A stretch of DNA of 63,126 bases, counting the filler, from Klebsormidium nitens (lineage: Eukaryota > Plantae > Klebsormidiophyceae): assembly GCA_000708835.1 (NCBI GenBank). It is 8 parts of 8 records of this genome, joined end to end, with 100 filler letters (N's around TTAATTAATTAA, not from the genome) between each part and the next. Parts side by side here need not be neighbours in the genome. Positions count along the whole stretch, not along the records: positions 1 to 5,700 come from DF238410.1; 7 more parts are not named here. One strand, 5' to 3'. Positions within the stretch are counted from its first letter, which is position 1, and each line of letters opens with the position of its first letter. The notes under the pieces are model-generated. The model saw only the letters and a list, made by a program, of their open reading frames with translations. It ran no database searches and had not been told where the DNA came from. Shown here piece by piece: positions 28-5,622 of this stretch. A program made the position numbers and the translations under genes.

Positions 28-1158
28 ATGCATGTTTTGCTTCAAGGTCTGGTGCAAGTGCTTTTTGAAGACAGGCATTTGCAGAAGCAGCACATAGACA
101 AATTAGAAAGAAGGATCGCTGAGATGATGAAGGAAGGGTTTCCTGGGGTTAAGGAAATGCAGGCGCCGGGCTTGAAGCTTTTTAGGGAGGAGCAGGGGCA
201 GGGGCAGGGGCAGGAGCAGGAGAGGCTGGCGCCAGGATCGATGCTCCCTGAGGAGGGGCCGGGGCAGGAACAGGAGGGGCTGGCGCCAGGGTCGATGCTC
301 CCGGAGGAGGGGCAGGGGCAGGGGCAGGAGGAGGAGGGGCTGGCGCCAGGATCAAAGCTTTCTGAGGAGGGGCAGGGGCAGGGGCAGGAGCAGGAGGGGC
401 TGGCGCCAGGATCAAAGCTTTCTGAGGAGGGGCAAGAGGAGAAAAGGATGGCGCCGCGGTCGATGCAGGGACGGGAGAGGCTGGCGCCGGGGAAAGAGCT
501 TCCTGATGAGAGGCAATGGATGGAGAGGCAGGCGCCCGCGTCGATGCTTTCTGGGGAGAGGCAGGAGGAGGCGCAATTGTCGGTGCTTTCTGGGAGGTTG
601 GCGCCGAAATTGATGCTCTCTGAGGAGCGGCGGGGGCAGGAGAGGCAGGCGCCGGTGTCGATGTTCCCCGAGGAGAGGCTGCAGAAGCAGGCGCCGGGGC
701 TAATGCCCTCTGAGGAGGGGCAGGCGCAAGAGCAGGAGAGGCAGGCGCCGACGTCGGTGCTTTCTGGGGAGAGAGAGGAAGAGCAGGCGCCGGCATCGAT
801 GCTTTCTGAGAAGCTGGCGCCAGGGCTGATGCTCTCTGAGGAGCGGCGGGGGCAGCAAAGGCATGCGCCGGAGTCGAGGCTTCCCGAAGAGAGGCAGGGG
901 AGGCGGGCGCAGAAGGGGCAGGTTCGGGGATCGATGCTCTCTGAGGAGCGGCGGGGGCAGGAGAGGCAGGCGTCGGTGTCGAGCCTTCCCGAGCATAAGC
1001 AGAAGAGTCAGCAGACCTCTGAGAAGGATAGGAGGAAGACGGAGAGGCGGGAGCGAAAGGAGTCGAAGAAGCGAGAACACAGATCGAAGACGGTGAGTAG
1101 GACGTCCCGGCACTCGAAGGTGCCGTCCCCTGCCGTATTCGATGCGATGAACTTCTAG
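28..1158 (+). CDS. Low-complexity E/Q/G-rich tandem-repeat protein with basic C-terminus, function unknown
   Basis: 376-aa intronless ORF with repeats such as GQGQGQEQEGLAPGSKLSEE and QAPASMLSGE, ending in a K/R-rich tail. Confidence 0.5.
   Translation: MHVLLQGLVQVLFEDRHLQKQHIDKLERRIAEMMKEGFPGVKEMQAPGLKLFREEQGQGQGQEQERLAPGSMLPEEGPGQEQEGLAPGSMLPEEGQGQGQEEEGLAPGSKLSEEGQGQGQEQEGLAPGSKLSEEGQEEKRMAPRSMQGRERLAPGKELPDERQWMERQAPASMLSGERQEEAQLSVLSGRLAPKLMLSEERRGQERQAPVSMFPEERLQKQAPGLMPSEEGQAQEQERQAPTSVLSGEREEEQAPASMLSEKLAPGLMLSEERRGQQRHAPESRLPEERQGRRAQKGQVRGSMLSEERRGQERQASVSSLPEHKQKSQQTSEKDRRKTERRERKESKKREHRSKTVSRTSRHSKVPSPAVFDAMNF
200..445 (+). repeat. Coding minisatellite, 54-60 bp unit
   Basis: Near-identical units CAGGAGGGGCTGGCGCCAGGATCAAAGCTTTCTGAGGAGGGGCAGGGG; degenerate copies continue to about 990. 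Confidence 0.85.
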
Positions 1159-1950: not shown

Positions 1951-2589
1951 TTAAGTATCTGTAGGGATGAAATGCCATGATAGGTCTTGCCAGATCCTTT
2001 CCCATATCCCGTCGTATACCCTCAGCTTCACCCTACTCTTCACCAACGGTACGTGAACCAGCATCTGATCTATCTTCAACAGCTGGCAGAACTTGTACAA
2101 GCAGAATGCGTACGAGAGGAAGCTCGCCCGCCCCGGCGGTTTGTTCTTCTGGAACGGCTCTTGCACAGCCGAAAACATGAATATGATCTTCTCTTTCATC
2201 TCAGTGTCTATCTCAGGTTCTGCTGCCCCGCCTAGGGACCGGCAGATGGACACCGAATGCTCGTAATACTGTGACAGATTGAGCTTCTTCAAGTAACCAC
2301 GAACTTTTTGGGGAGTGATCTCGTCGACAGACGTCATGTCTGCCTTCCTGAATTCAGCCTTCACCGCATCGATGACATCGTGTGGGATGACTGTCCTTTC
2401 TTTGCCGAGCACCTGATTCAGCCAGTTGGTGAAATGGACAATCCTTTTGTAGTTGAACGAAGGGAACACGCCTCTGTGACTATGCAGAGCGGATGTCATG
2501 ATGTTGCTATGTCTGGAGAGTTCGAAATCTTGATTCCCTAAACACTGTACACCTCTTTGGTCGAGAGCGTGCCCAGCAGTCCCGACCAA
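1951..2589 (-). CDS. VLTF3: NCLDV late transcription factor VLTF3 (poxvirus A2L-like); 5' part degraded
   Basis: Family motifs YKRIVHFTNWLNQVLGKE..IP, VRGYLKKL...YYEH, SFLSY.FCLYKFCQLL, KS..KL...D.IW..I..DL.W.FIPT. The N-terminal Zn-finger region is missing or frameshifted (an ACLR(C)G-like remnant sits in another frame near 2590-2630). Confidence 0.9.
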   Translation of the reverse strand: MVGTAGHALDQRGVQCLGNQDFELSRHSNIMTSALHSHRGVFPSFNYKRIVHFTNWLNQVLGKERTVIPHDVIDAVKAEFRKADMTSVDEITPQKVRGYLKKLNLSQYYEHSVSICRSLGGAAEPEIDTEMKEKIIFMFSAVQEPFQKNKPPGRASFLSYAFCLYKFCQLLKIDQMLVHVPLVKSRVKLRVYDGIWERIWQDLSWHFIPTDT

Positions 2590-2680
2590 TCAGAGAGCGC
2601 CACGAAGACACGCATGCTCGAATATCGGGCATCGCGGCTGCACCAGCGGAAAGAGGGGGGCTTTTCGCTGCAGAAATGGA

Positions 2681-3646
2681 CTACAAAAACTTGTGTTCCC
2701 GGGCAACCCTATGCATGAGGTCAAAACCAGTAGCGTCTGGGTCGGTCCCCTCGATCTGCTCGTTCCTGTAAGCTTTCACGTGGGTCGCCCGCCCGTTGAC
2801 TTCCACGAGTTTCGTCCCTGGCTCCTTCCCGGCAATCTGCCTATATTTTTCTGCGAGGATTTTCCCGGGAATTTGTAGCTGCTTGGAATTGAACACCTTT
2901 CCATGCTCGAGCTGCAGGTATTCAGACAGCGTGTACTCTTTCACAACCGGCGCCCGTTCCAAGGCTGGTGGTACCGGTCCACTCGCGCGGTGACCCAGTC
3001 CGGTGAGGTTTTTAGCCTCGCGGACGATCCCCTGGAAGCTCATCAAGTCTGTAACCGTAAAGGCTCCGATTCCCTCGAGTGTGCTGCGCCACTCGTGAGC
3101 AAAACGGATGCGCTTGGCTGGAGCCTCTTCTTCCAACCTTCTATTTTCGATGCGCAGTCTTTCCGTCTCCACTTTCAGCTTCCCCTTCTCGAGTTGGTAC
3201 AGCATCATGGCATTAGGCTCTTCGGGCCGCGCGTGTACGGTAGCCGAGTCGAGCCACGCATCGCGAACGGCGAGGAAGAAAGATCTGACCCGATCCCCCT
3301 TGTCCCCAAGTGCACTCAGCGCGAAGAACTCGAAGGCCTTCGTGGTCATGAAGTATTTGTCCGTCGGTCTTCCACCTAGATCTGCTCCGGAAGGGTTCTT
3401 GTGATGTCTCACAACATCCCTCCGGAAATCAGTACCCTCCTTAAAGCACCGCTTCAGTTTTTGCAGGGCGTTCCCTTTCGAAGAGTACTCCAAAAACAAC
3501 CACACATCATCGAAGTCGATCGGAAAGTCGTTGCCTCCGTCATCAAAGGCTTTGATGAATACCAGTGCAAGGTCTTGCTTTTCACCGTCTGAAATGTCCA
3601 CGATCGCCGAGACCTTTGGATGCGACAGGAACGGGGTGATATCCAT
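2681..3646 (-). CDS. MSV199/AntA-antirepressor-like DNA-binding protein, with coiled coil and phage-antirepressor-like C-terminus
   Basis: FPIDFDDVWLFLEYSSKGNALQKLKRCFKEGTDF...GGRPTDKYFMTTKAFEFFAL...KGDRVRSFF; C-terminal GKILAEKYRQIAGKEP..VEVNGR..VKAY. First ATG at 3646 (ORF finder used TTG at 3679). Confidence 0.75.
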   Translation of the reverse strand: MDITPFLSHPKVSAIVDISDGEKQDLALVFIKAFDDGGNDFPIDFDDVWLFLEYSSKGNALQKLKRCFKEGTDFRRDVVRHHKNPSGADLGGRPTDKYFMTTKAFEFFALSALGDKGDRVRSFFLAVRDAWLDSATVHARPEEPNAMMLYQLEKGKLKVETERLRIENRRLEEEAPAKRIRFAHEWRSTLEGIGAFTVTDLMSFQGIVREAKNLTGLGHRASGPVPPALERAPVVKEYTLSEYLQLEHGKVFNSKQLQIPGKILAEKYRQIAGKEPGTKLVEVNGRATHVKAYRNEQIEGTDPDATGFDLMHRVAREHKFL

Positions 3647-3911
3647 TTGTACCAACCTCACAACCAGATCCTGATCCAAAAGGTCTGCCCCGAGGCTTTC
3701 TTATACCAGGCTGCTGCCAACTGTCTACTAGTGGTAGACTACCGGATCCTAATTCGCAAGCCCCAAGGTGTTTCAAAGCAAGAGGGACAAGAAAGCTCCT
3801 CCTTAAAGCTGGTGAGACTTGCTCTCGTCACGAATCAATGCATGATCATCTCTGAGAAAAGTTACGTATTAGGGATCCGCTCGCGGACTTTCATACCCTT
3901 CCAGCGAGACG

Positions 3912-4202: not shown

Positions 4203-4760
4203 CTAGCCTCGTGGAGTGAGCACGTCGTAATATCTGGTCCGCTCCAAAACTGCCGTAGGCGGCTCCCGCGAGGGTCCCGCTCCGCCGAAGACTCGAGGCT
4301 CGTAGCGCCGGAGTTCGTCTCCGTCCTTCACCACGATCACCGTGCACGTCGCGTACGCCAACACCTCCAGCTCTAGGACGCCTCGCATCGCATCTTTCCT
4401 GACAGATGCCGCGTGTGCCTTCGCTCGGGCGGGCCCCTTCATGCGCTGAACCGCGTCCGGCCAGAACCTGGCGGGATCCATCTCAAGATCGGCGCAGGCC
4501 TCGCGGAGCTCCCTGACGCTACGGGCGTCTCTCGTGGCGCGCCGGACCGCAGCGAACATATTGTCCCTCGTCTTGGGCACGATCACTCTCTTGAAGTCTC
4601 GTCTGATCTTGCGAAGGTCGATCTTGCCGTGATAGTCGTCGTACCGGGCGGGACGTCTCGTATCGCGGGCGGGCCTGACTATGGGCACTACCCTCTTCAC
4701 CCTGAGAGGACCCGGTGGCAGAAACCCACCTCCTCTGGGTGCCGAAGACCGGCCTGCGTC
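4203..4760 (-). CDS. OTU-fold domain lacking catalytic Cys and His; probably the frameshifted 3' half of the histone-fold gene
   Basis: VIVPKTRDNMFAAV matches the Cys loop (PGDGNCLFRAV), ELR, RKDAMRGVLELEVLAY..VIVV matches the variable loop (KDG.WGG.LEL.ALA...I.V), and RYYDVL matches the His loop (HYD.L). No ATG of its own before the domain. Confidence 0.62.
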   Translation of the reverse strand, partial: DAGRSSAPRGGGFLPPGPLRVKRVVPIVRPARDTRRPARYDDYHGKIDLRKIRRDFKRVIVPKTRDNMFAAVRRATRDARSVRELREACADLEMDPARFWPDAVQRMKGPARAKAHAASVRKDAMRGVLELEVLAYATCTVIVVKDGDELRRYEPRVFGGAGPSREPPTAVLERTRYYDVLTPRG

Positions 4761-5385
4761 GCTCGCTCCTCTTTCTCTTGGAGGGTGCACCGGGACTTCC
4801 TGATCCGAAATCAAGGCGCCTCGCGATGGGATGAGAGTGTTCGCTCCATCCCCTCCTGGCACCGGGCGTCTGCCTGGCTCGCTCGCTCCTCTTCCTCTTG
4901 ACGGGTCTTATAGGGCCGGGCGGCGTCTCGGGACTTCTGGCGCTGGGGTGCGTCTCGGTCGCTCTGGGGCTAGGCGGCGTTCCGAAGGTATCCGGGTTCC
5001 AGTCATCACCCCCAAAGTCCACTCCCGCATATTCGTCGACGTGAGGAAGCGGCGACGGTGGACGGGCGGCTCTCCGGGGCCTCGGGACCGGGTTGAAAAA
5101 GTCCCGGTACTTGGCATCGTGGAGGAGACGGTGCCGCAGCGCCCCTTCCGTCTGGAGACCGCCTATGAAGTCCACCATCGCGACGTCGGTCGGTGTGAAG
5201 TTCCTCAATCTTCCGTTTCGCGCGTACAGGGCCAGCACGCCGGATCTGGCGGCGGTCTTCCGCATCCGACTGCGGATGGCTCCACGCAGAACGGCGCACG
5301 CACCCGCCCCCAACCTCGTGTTCGGGGGACGGAAAGTCTTGATGATAGCGTCGACGGTGCGATCGCTCACGGAGGGGACTATCAT
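4519..5385 (-). CDS. Histone-fold (H2A/H2B-like) protein with basic S/T-P-rich tail
   Basis: From ATG 5385: VDAIIKTFRPPNTRLGAGACAVLRGAIRSRMRKTAARSGVLALY..GRLRNFTPTDVAMV. Aligns with H2A ERVGAGAPVYLAAVL...[22 protein letters not shown] and with H2B KVLKQVHPDT...RLAHY...TITSREI. Helix lengths fit a1-L1-a2-L2-a3. Confidence 0.6.
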   Translation of the reverse strand: MIVPSVSDRTVDAIIKTFRPPNTRLGAGACAVLRGAIRSRMRKTAARSGVLALYARNGRLRNFTPTDVAMVDFIGGLQTEGALRHRLLHDAKYRDFFNPVPRPRRAARPPSPLPHVDEYAGVDFGGDDWNPDTFGTPPSPRATETHPSARSPETPPGPIRPVKRKRSERARQTPGARRGWSEHSHPIARRLDFGSGSPGAPSKRKRSERRRPVFGTQRRWVSATGSSQGEEGSAHSQARPRYETSRPVRRLSRQDRPSQDQTRLQESDRAQDEGQYVRCGPARHERRP

Positions 5386-5409
5386 TTTCGTTATGTATAT
5401 CACACATAA
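5386..5409. promoter_or_regulatory. Putative bidirectional AT-rich viral promoter
   Basis: 24-bp AT-rich spacer between two divergent ATGs in GC-rich DNA. TAAATG on + resembles the poxvirus late initiator; AAAATG on -. Confidence 0.45.
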
Positions 5410-5622
5410 ATGGTGCCATCCCAGAAAGTCGTCGAGGGCCTCGTGGGGGCGCATCTGACGAGGCCTCAGTACAAGGCACTCGACGATTCATTCGACTCCT
5501 ACGTCAGAAAGGCATTCGAGGCGGCGAGGAGGAGGGCGACCGAGAGGGTCGGTGAGGCACCGGCATCGGTGACCATAAGCGCCGACGACATGCGTCGAGC
5601 TATCGCTGCCGCTTGGTTGTGA
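5410..5622 (+). CDS. Minimal tail-less histone-fold protein (H4/H2B/archaeal-histone-like)
   Basis: 70 aa. [30 protein letters not shown] matches H4 [41 protein letters not shown] matches KTVTAMDVVYAL. Confidence 0.6.
   Translation: [70 protein letters not shown]

What the first reader, a model, noticed from the sequence alone, without database searches (positions are those of the whole stretch)
4203..5622. Head-to-head pair of divergent histone-fold genes in giant-virus DNA
Seen: two intronless ORFs start 24 bp apart in opposite directions across an AT-rich spacer (TAAATG / AAAATG), on the same contig as VLTF3. The 70-aa protein reads as a bare histone fold (29-residue a2, then [12 protein letters not shown]). 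The other begins with a fold carrying the H2A-like RLGAGA loop, SG..A and FTPTDV. Known: eukaryotic H2A-H2B and H3-H4 genes are often divergent pairs, and marseilleviruses and medusaviruses encode histones, as fused doublets or canonical-like singlets. Inference: a heterodimeric viral chromatin or nucleosome-mimic module, too diverged for routine annotation, from a virus that also seems to carry a Chlorella-virus-type capping enzyme (different contig).
Basis: partly seen in the sequence, partly recalled or inferred. Interest (0 to 1): 0.9.

Follow-up and report, generated by a model that had tools for sequence, protein, structure and literature searches.

The report
Histone-fold gene pair with OTU-like tail
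A giant-virus-like scaffold in the genome assembly of the alga Klebsormidium nitens carries a conserved back-to-back gene pair: a tiny protein and the front of a longer one are both predicted to adopt the histone fold. The longer protein ends in a deubiquitinase-like domain that lacks its catalytic cysteine, so this looks like a new kind of viral chromatin-associated module rather than an ordinary histone pair.

Summary
The layout is real. A 70-aa gene (5410-5622, +) and a long gene on the minus strand (start 5385) begin 24 nt apart across a 75% A+T spacer, on a scaffold that also carries VLTF3. The window is GenBank DF238410.1 (K. nitens).

The long "ORF" is not intact. It changes reading frame once, and the public model bridges this with a 55-nt intron that the intact relative lacks.

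The divergent pair recurs in all nine distinct loci that have sequence upstream of the long gene, mostly on giant-virus contigs. dN/dS is 0.12-0.32.

No sequence method links either protein to histones (Pfam, NCBIfam, PDB profiles, exhaustive HMMER). The AlphaFold2 models do show the histone-fold helix pattern:
- Small protein: best PDB match is archaeal histone HMfA (TM 0.70, rmsd 2.7 Å). The best four viral-library matches are viral histones.
- Long protein's N-terminal domain: the top 50 PDB matches are all histone-fold proteins, but weakly (TM about 0.40, E ≥ 0.06).

The long protein's C-terminus is OTU-like, with Asn in place of the catalytic Cys. Some relatives insert intact OTU domains.

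Best reading: a histone-fold heterodimer that anchors an OTU-type ubiquitin module. It is not shown to be nucleosomal.

The parts
5410..5622 (+). Small gene: a 70-aa basic protein (pI 9.4) predicted to be a bare histone fold (helices at residues 3-12, 18-47, 58-69). It has no model in the public record.
   Evidence: ORF. Homologues: P0001 at 65% identity and eight locus-encoded relatives. dN/dS 0.16-0.30. AF2 pLDDT 74.6. Foldseek: HMfA TM 0.70, rmsd 2.7 Å, and viral histones top the viral library. No exact product on record, and no model on DF238410.1.
5386..5409 (.). 24-nt A+T-rich spacer between the two start codons, containing a TATA-like GATATA element. Presumed shared or bidirectional promoter core.
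   Evidence: In relatives the spacers are 24-56 nt and 60-81% A+T, in loci of 51-62% G+C, and most have an (A/G)TATA element. Promoter function is inferred.
4203..5385 (-). Long gene (public model KFL_014610030 / P0002, which starts at 5454). It consists of a histone-fold domain, a basic Pro/Arg-rich linker and an OTU-like domain. It is broken by one frameshift and has no internal stops.
   Evidence: The intact relative P0003 (444 aa) is a single ORF. The start at 5385 is supported by the conserved start in L001 and L002. The annotated 55-nt GT..AG intron aligns to coding residues of P0003.
5086..5385 (-). N-terminal domain of the long gene (residues 1-100), predicted to be a histone fold plus an extra C-terminal helix (helices 8-18, 27-57, 65-74, 80-89). 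pI 11.5.
   Evidence: AF2 on a 10-sequence alignment: pLDDT 84.1, pTM 0.63. Foldseek PDB: the top 50 are all histone-fold proteins, best E 0.062, prob 0.95, TM about 0.40. The exhaustive HMMER search found only 10 family members.
4203..4643 (-). C-terminal domain of the long gene (146 aa plus stop). It is OTU-like, with Asn at the catalytic Cys column and Tyr at the His column.
   Evidence: Alignment A8. Pfam OTU hits the same domain in relatives: P0010 residues 672-751, E 1.3e-10, 42.3 bits against a cut-off of 23.3, and 4 of 6 members at E ≤ 1. The window copy itself has no hit. Weak alignments to yeast OTU1 and to the family's own Cys-bearing OTU domains place Asn on the Cys.
1951..2589 (-). 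Context: VLTF3-like late transcription factor gene, which marks the scaffold as giant-virus (Nucleocytoviricota) derived.
   Evidence: Pfam PF04947, E 7.2e-44, profile positions 5-168 of 168. It is 70% identical to the C-terminal 170 aa of the VLTF3 on L004, a contig that also carries the pair.

Best explanation
The two genes are a conserved, divergently transcribed module of a phycodnavirus-like giant-virus lineage. A copy sits here on a 5.7-kb scaffold of the Klebsormidium nitens assembly.

The 70-aa product is a minimal histone-fold protein. The first ~90 residues of the long product form a second histone-fold domain. Histone folds are stable only as handshake dimers, and the two genes always travel together across a 24-56-nt A+T-rich spacer, so the two most likely pair as a basic heterodimer that binds DNA or chromatin (inferred).

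This dimer anchors the rest of the long protein. That rest is a basic low-complexity linker with KRKRS-type repeats, followed by an OTU-family domain that has lost the catalytic Cys and His and is therefore more likely a ubiquitin-binding or scaffolding module than an enzyme. Some relatives have one or two Cys/His-bearing OTU domains inserted between the two ends.

The module would therefore bring ubiquitin recognition or removal to DNA-bound substrates. It resembles CENP-T/CENP-W or NF-Y style histone-fold adaptors more than nucleosome core histones.

In this window the long gene carries one frameshift, so this copy may be a decaying endogenous relic or may contain an assembly error.

Shown: the gene layout, its conservation, purifying selection, the predicted folds, and OTU homology at the level of the family. 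Inferred: dimerisation, DNA binding, and a ubiquitin-related role.
For: - Layout and frames.
- Identity of the scaffold.
- Pair conserved in nine distinct loci, on contigs with capsid, VLTF3, ribonucleotide reductase, RNase III and helicase genes.
- dN/dS 0.12-0.32.
- AF2 helix patterns typical of a histone fold.
- Foldseek, small protein against HMfA: TM 0.70/0.71, rmsd 2.7 Å over 66 columns; the next 49 hits are H3-family chains.
- In the viral library, where histones are rare, the top four hits are viral histones.
- N-terminal domain: the top 50 PDB hits are all histone-fold proteins.
- Both families are basic, pI 9.4-11.5, apart from one truncated member at pI 8.0.
- OTU homology of the C-terminal domain and loss of Cys and His.
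- Cys-bearing OTU domains in P0007, P0009, P0010 and P0012.
- One relative (L002) has a fused H2B-H2A doublet directly after the small gene, so the lineage does encode chromatin proteins.
Against: - No sequence or profile method reaches any histone-fold family for any of 19 family members or in PDB. The only histone hit is H2B at E 3.7.
- All Foldseek E-values are ≥ 0.06.
- The N-terminal domain model superposes poorly (TM about 0.40, rmsd about 10 Å).
- The small-protein model rests on a 2-sequence alignment (pLDDT 74.6).
- The two families are not significantly similar to each other (hhalign E 0.034, prob 1.5%).
- No dimer was modelled.
- The window's own C-terminal domain does not hit Pfam OTU.
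- The alignments that place Asn on the Cys are weak (E 0.38; P 0.0047).
Confidence: 0.55

Rival explanations
1. One reading: the two proteins are true nucleosomal-type viral histones, an H2A/H2B-like or H3/H4-like pair. They would wrap viral DNA into nucleosome-like particles, possibly together with the H2B-H2A doublet seen in a relative.
For: - Histone-fold predictions.
- The small protein's best eukaryotic matches are H3 chains, and its best viral matches are Clandestinovirus H4/H3 and Medusavirus H4.
- Both proteins are basic.
- A divergent H2B-H2A doublet lies next to the small gene in L002.
- Giant-virus histones and histone repeats are established (abstracts listed).
Against: - No sequence relationship to any core histone.
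- No N-terminal tails: the folds start at residues 3 and 8.
- The long protein is a multidomain OTU-family protein, unlike any described viral histone. The two viral-histone papers checked mention no OTU or ubiquitin link.
- The doublet was not found in the other held loci.
Confidence: 0.15
2. Neither protein is a histone fold. They are unrelated short helical proteins whose helix lengths lead AlphaFold2 and Foldseek toward the very abundant histone entries. The pair is co-regulated for a ubiquitin-related role that has nothing to do with DNA.
For: - All structural E-values are non-significant.
- TM is about 0.40 for the N-terminal domain.
- The small protein's alignment is shallow.
- There is no profile-level support.
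- The PDB is rich in histone chains.
Against: - The small-protein model superposes on HMfA over its whole length (TM 0.70, rmsd 2.7 Å).
- In the viral library, where histones are a tiny minority, histones still take the top four places.
- All 50 of the N-terminal domain's top PDB hits are histone-fold proteins from many different families, aligned over 70-100 columns.
- The only PDB sequence hit of the small family's profile is an H2B, aligned in register on helix 2, loop 2 and helix 3.
Confidence: 0.2
3. The pair consists of cellular (algal) genes or an annotation artefact, not viral genes.
For: The scaffold is part of the K. nitens assembly, and the long gene has a spliced eukaryote-style model.
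Against: - Every recognisable gene on the scaffold and on the relatives' contigs is of giant-virus type: VLTF3, major capsid protein, RNR and RNase III.
- K. flaccidum (now nitens) was already reported to hold Phycodnaviridae-like core genes including VLTF3 (PMC5294986).
- The family has only 10 representatives among 1.84 billion proteins, none of them a named cellular protein from another organism.
- The annotated intron aligns to coding sequence of the intact relative.
Confidence: 0.05

Closest known systems
Giant-virus histones (Marseilleviridae H2B-H2A and H4-H3 doublets; Medusavirus and Clandestinovirus singlets)
   Same: Histone-fold proteins encoded by Nucleocytoviricota. Medusavirus H4, Clandestinovirus H4/H3 and a Marseillevirus histone-like protein are among the small protein's best viral fold matches. 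A relative's locus carries an H2B-H2A doublet.
   Different: There is no detectable sequence homology to H2A, H2B, H3 or H4. There are no tails. The two folds are on separate, divergently transcribed genes. One fold is fused to OTU-family domains.
CENP-T/CENP-W and similar adaptor pairs (NF-YB/NF-YC, Dpb3/Dpb4, CHRAC)
   Same: A very small bare histone-fold subunit is paired with the histone-fold domain of a long protein that has a large disordered, basic region. NF-YC/NF-YB, Dpb4-Dpb3, CHRAC and CENP-T are the top fold matches of the N-terminal domain.
   Different: Here the fold is at the N-terminus of the long protein. There is no Pfam match to the CBFD_NFYB_HMF or CENP families. The setting is viral, and the attached module is OTU-like.
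Archaeal minimal histones (HMfA/HMfB)
   Same: About 68-70 residues with nothing beyond the three helices. This is the best structural match of the small protein (1b67_A, TM 0.70/0.71).
   Different: Identity is 17% and there is no profile hit. The small protein is presumably an obligate heterodimer partner rather than a homodimer former.
OTU deubiquitinases and catalytically dead OTU-like domains
   Same: The C-terminal domain family matches Pfam OTU in relatives and aligns weakly to yeast OTU1 and otulin.
   Different: The catalytic Cys column is Asn in all five members that cover that column (the sixth, L008, lacks the segment). The His column is Tyr or Phe in all six. I found no paper that holds both the terms histone-fold and OTU domain.
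Plasmodium ORP1/ORP2 histone-fold heterodimer (PDB 9rif)
   Same: This is a precedent for large proteins that use a histone-fold heterodimer as a pairing device. It appears among the N-terminal domain's fold matches (ranks 15, 18, 32).
   Different: Unrelated organism and biology. Only the fold is shared.

Membership tests
Core (nucleosomal) histones, Pfam Histone PF00125 | Significant sequence or profile similarity to H2A, H2B, H3 or H4 | tested here: not met
   No Pfam hit for the window proteins or for any of 19 family members, even at E ≤ 10. PDB phmmer and profile searches give only one H2B hit, at E 3.7.
Histone fold (structural superfamily) | Helix(~10)-loop-helix(~30)-loop-helix(~10) architecture | tested here: met
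   AF2 models. Small protein: helices 3-12, 18-47, 58-69. N-terminal domain: helices 8-18, 27-57, 65-74, plus 80-89. These are predictions, not solved structures.
Histone fold (structural superfamily) | 3-D superposition on solved histone-fold proteins | tested here: inconclusive
   Small protein: TM 0.70, rmsd 2.7 Å to HMfA, but E 0.086. N-terminal domain: all 50 top hits are histone folds, but TM is about 0.40, rmsd about 10 Å and E ≥ 0.062.
Histone fold (structural superfamily) | Obligate handshake dimer with a partner fold | not testable with these tools
   No multimer prediction was available. The only support is the conserved divergent pairing in nine distinct loci.
Core (nucleosomal) histones | Basic N-terminal tails, and assembly into DNA-wrapping tetramers or octamers | tested here: not met
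   Tails are absent: the folds begin at residues 3 and 8. Assembly and DNA wrapping could not be tested.
OTU cysteine proteases, Pfam PF02338 | Profile match above the gathering score | tested here: inconclusive
   The window's C-terminal domain has no hit. The homologous domain of P0010 scores 42.3 bits against a cut-off of 23.3, and 4 of 6 aligned members match at E ≤ 1.
OTU cysteine proteases, Pfam PF02338 | Catalytic Cys and His present | tested here: not met
   The Cys column is Asn (window: DNMF) in all five members that cover it, and the His column is Tyr or Phe in all six. The column assignment comes from weak alignments to yeast OTU1 (E 0.38) and to the family's own Cys-bearing OTU domains (P 0.0047).
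Nucleocytoviricota (giant-virus) derived DNA | Hallmark core genes on the same contig or on contigs of close relatives | tested here: met
   VLTF3 in the window. VLTF3 on L004, major capsid protein on L007, and RNR, RNase III and helicase on L006. Prior report for this alga: PMC5294986.

The most novel reading that the evidence does not exclude
The small protein and the N-terminal domain of the long protein are the H3/H4-equivalent half of a virus-specific nucleosome-like particle, completed in some relatives by the fused H2B-H2A doublet. In this particle one histone is covalently joined to an OTU-type ubiquitin reader or eraser. That would be chromatin with its own built-in (de)ubiquitination module, in a lineage of algal giant viruses that also endogenises in streptophyte algae.
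Probability: 0.1. Interest if true: 0.85.

Novelty: new variant of a known kind. Interest (0 to 1): 0.6.

Why it matters
Viral histones are used to reason about how nucleosomes arose, and about how giant viruses package and regulate their DNA. This family is missed by Pfam, NCBIfam and PDB sequence searches. It has only about ten representative clusters among 1.84 billion proteins. It joins a histone fold to ubiquitin-system (OTU) domains, a combination I found in no paper. If the heterodimer and DNA binding are confirmed, it would add a non-nucleosomal, adaptor-type use of the histone fold to the viral repertoire, and it would link viral chromatin to ubiquitin signalling. It also shows that eukaryote-style gene models on endogenous viral DNA can hide small genes and bridge a frameshift with an intron.

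Tried and rejected
- Exact-product look-ups for the 70-aa, VLTF3 and 155-aa window proteins found nothing on record.
- NCBIfam gave nothing relevant.
- Pattern scans of IMG/VR with three alignments found no relatives.
- The first JGI metagenome scan found nothing. The second gave one locus, L011, whose match is a short motif inside an unrelated ORF, so I rejected it as a false positive.
- The word-indexed search with the C-terminal domain of P0003 returned only P0003 itself.
- hhalign of the small family against the N-terminal family was not significant.
- tblastn of the L002 H2B-H2A doublet against the window and all held loci found no further copy.
- tblastn of the other window ORFs against the held loci found only VLTF3 shared, with L004.
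I did not resend those sequences. I also did not route locus-derived small proteins through another tool to get them accepted, so the small-protein model uses only the window protein and P0001.
Its two parts were searched separately by reference.
- Literature searches for a histone-fold/OTU combination found nothing.
Full report
**What is in the window.** The 5700-base piece is GenBank DF238410.1, a whole small scaffold of the Klebsormidium nitens assembly GCA_000708835.1. It carries a VLTF3-like gene at 1951-2589(-) (Pfam PF04947, E 7.2e-44). K. flaccidum (now nitens) was already reported to contain Phycodnaviridae-like giant-virus core genes, VLTF3 included (PMC5294986). The public record has only three spliced, eukaryote-style gene models on the scaffold, and none covers the 70-aa gene.

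**The observation.** A 70-aa ORF runs 5410-5622(+). On the other strand an ATG at 5385 opens the long gene. The 24 nt between them are 75% A+T in a scaffold of 57% G+C. The public model starts the long gene further upstream at 5454, which would overlap the small gene. The relatives L001 and L002 share the start that corresponds to 5385.

The stretch 4203-5385 is not one ORF. It is covered by two overlapping minus-strand ORFs in different frames. Third-position G+C supports the first frame in the 5' part and the second frame in the 3' part. An intact 444-aa relative (P0003, a single ORF on L001) aligns to the window in exactly two frames with no internal stops. So the gene has one frameshift.

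The public model P0002 bridges the frame change with a 55-nt GT..AG intron whose length is not a multiple of three. That stretch aligns to coding residues of the intact relative in both frames, and the relative has no intron. The intron is therefore more likely an annotation device than real. Whether the frame change is biological or an assembly error cannot be told from here.

**Conservation.**
- The word-indexed search found one homologue of the small protein (P0001, 65% identity) and one intact homologue of the long protein (P0003).
- An exhaustive HMMER search of 1.84 billion representative proteins with the N-terminal domain profile found only ten proteins (E 6e-62 to 9e-9). None has a functional name. 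The only named one is the K. nitens hypothetical protein.
- Fetching their contigs showed a 65-83-aa gene lying head-to-head with the long gene in every locus that has sequence upstream: the window, L001, L002, L003, L004 (L005 is a second contig carrying the same long protein), L006, L007, L008, and a partial copy on L009.
- These small proteins align as one family.
- The distance between the two starts is 24-56 nt. The spacers are 60-81% A+T in loci of 51-62% G+C, and most contain an (A/G)TATA element.
- The host contigs carry giant-virus genes: major capsid protein, VLTF3, ribonucleotide reductase, RNase III and a UvrD-type helicase.
- Pairwise dN/dS is 0.15-0.30 for the small gene, 0.12-0.32 for the N-terminal domain and 0.27 for the C-terminal domain.

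Both are therefore real genes under purifying selection, and their pairing is not chance.

**Are they histone folds? Sequence evidence.** It is negative throughout.
- No Pfam family is hit by the window proteins or by any of 9 small-family and 10 N-terminal-family members, even at E ≤ 10.
- NCBIfam gives nothing.
- PDB searches with single sequences and with profiles give nothing for the N-terminal domain. For the small family the only hit is a histone H2B variant at E 3.7, aligned in register over helix 2, loop 2 and helix 3.
- The two families are not significantly similar to each other.

**Are they histone folds? Structural evidence.** It is positive but of moderate strength.
- N-terminal domain: AlphaFold2 on a 10-sequence alignment gives pLDDT 84.1, with helices at 8-18, 27-57 and 65-74 plus an extra helix at 80-89. 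Foldseek against the PDB returns only histone-fold proteins in its top 50 (HapE/NF-YC, NF-YB, Dpb3/Dpb4, CHRAC, CENP-T, ORP1/2, H2A, H2B, H3, TAFs). The best E is 0.062, prob 0.95, TM about 0.40 and rmsd about 10 Å.
- Small protein: it could be modelled with only two sequences. It gives pLDDT 74.6, with helices at 3-12, 18-47 and 58-69. It superposes on archaeal histone HMfA at TM 0.70/0.71 and rmsd 2.7 Å over 66 columns (prob 1.00, E 0.086). The next 49 hits are H3-family chains.
- Control for the abundance of histones in the PDB: in the viral structure library, where histones are rare, the top four hits are an iridescent-virus H2A-like protein, Clandestinovirus H4 and H3, and Medusavirus H4.
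- Both families are basic, with pI 9.4-11.5 apart from one truncated member at pI 8.0.

I conclude that the small protein is probably a histone fold (about 0.8) and the N-terminal domain probably is too (about 0.7). Neither is a member of any defined histone family.

**The rest of the long protein.**
- After the N-terminal domain comes a Pro/Arg-rich linker with repeated KRKRS-type motifs. Relatives have three such repeats or other basic Ser/Pro repeats.
- The C-terminal ~146 residues (4206-4643) form a family-wide domain. In relatives it matches Pfam OTU: P0010 residues 672-751, E 1.3e-10, above the gathering score, and 4 of 6 members at E ≤ 1. The window copy itself gives no hit.
- Weak alignments to yeast OTU1 and to the family's own OTU domains place a conserved Asn on the catalytic Cys column and Tyr or Phe on the His column.
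- Four relatives (P0007, P0009, P0010, P0012) also carry one or two OTU domains that keep the Cys motif, and those whose domains are complete keep the His motif too. L003 and L006 have a further stand-alone OTU gene nearby.
- The family architecture is therefore: histone fold, basic linker, zero to two active-looking OTU domains, and a Cys-less OTU-like domain.

**Mechanism proposed.** The pair forms a basic histone-fold heterodimer, expressed from a shared short A+T-rich spacer. The dimer binds DNA or chromatin and tethers OTU-type ubiquitin recognition or removal there. Dimerisation, DNA binding and the ubiquitin role are inferences. The closest functional analogues are adaptor pairs such as CENP-T/CENP-W or NF-YB/NF-YC, not nucleosome cores.

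A nucleosome-like role is not excluded, because one relative (L002) encodes a divergent fused H2B-H2A doublet directly after its small gene (203 PDB H2A/H2B hits, best E 7.6e-4). No such doublet was seen in the other held loci.

**Status of this copy.** One frameshift in the long gene, a scaffold with no host genes, and a VLTF3 that matches only the C-terminal 170 residues of the 367-aa VLTF3 on L004 are all compatible with a decaying endogenous viral fragment. An assembly error or a naturally short VLTF3 cannot be excluded.

**Novelty.** Viral histone-fold proteins are known. Two viral-histone papers (PMC11222145, PMC9145170) contain no mention of OTU or ubiquitin links, and no paper in the library holds both the terms histone-fold and OTU domain. 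I rate this a new variant of a known kind, with interest 0.6.

1. I stopped when I noticed. None of those letters went into a tool call, note or this report, and every comparison reported here rests on tool output.
2. In the scripts the exons of the public gene model P0002 were joined in memory, as they stand, solely to locate and test the annotated intron. Nothing was saved, and only splice dinucleotides, intron length and overlap counts were printed.
3. No frame-joined, repaired or consensus sequence was built, searched or folded. The two parts of the long gene were always queried separately by reference.
This is why the small-protein model has a shallow alignment.

Noticed in passing
L002:624-1550 (+): Directly after the small histone-fold gene, a relative encodes a 308-aa protein whose C-terminal half is a divergent fused H2B-H2A doublet (203 PDB hits; best is a single-chain H2B-H2A.Z at E 7.6e-4). 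It is preceded by two basic ~60-aa repeats. Pfam gives no hit.
   Followed up: partly
window 1951-3646 (-) and 124-1676: The public annotation of DF238410.1 has only three spliced models (398, 494 and 455 aa). The 494-aa model fuses VLTF3 with the unrelated 332-aa ORF at 2681-3679. The 70-aa gene has no model.
   Followed up: partly
window 1951-2589 (-): The window's VLTF3 matches only residues 196-365 of the 367-aa VLTF3 on L004 (70% identity). The N-terminal ~195 residues of the L004 protein have no counterpart anywhere in the window. This could be a short natural form or a truncated copy.
   Followed up: partly
window 28-1158 (+): A 376-aa ORF made of tandem repeats with periods of 54-114 nt (Gln/Gly/Glu-rich, 60-68% G+C). 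It has no family hit and no counterpart in the related loci.
   Followed up: partly
window 2681-3679 (-): A 332-aa ORF with coding-like GC3. It has no Pfam or NCBIfam hit and no match in the related loci. Function unknown.
   Followed up: no
L003:3203-3748 (+); L006:10630-11157 (+): Two relatives carry a separate 175-181-aa OTU protease gene (Pfam OTU) two genes downstream of the long gene. The neighbourhood is therefore enriched in OTU-family genes.
   Followed up: no
L001:5202-5714 (-): Next to the small gene in L001 lies a 170-aa predicted membrane protein with a weak, below-cut-off match to the thrombospondin/spondin-type TSP1 repeat (E 3.8e-6).
   Followed up: no
L011:2827-3864 (+): The only hit of the second metagenome scan is a short shared motif inside an unrelated 345-aa ORF on a 169-kb contig. 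It is a false positive for this family.
   Followed up: yes
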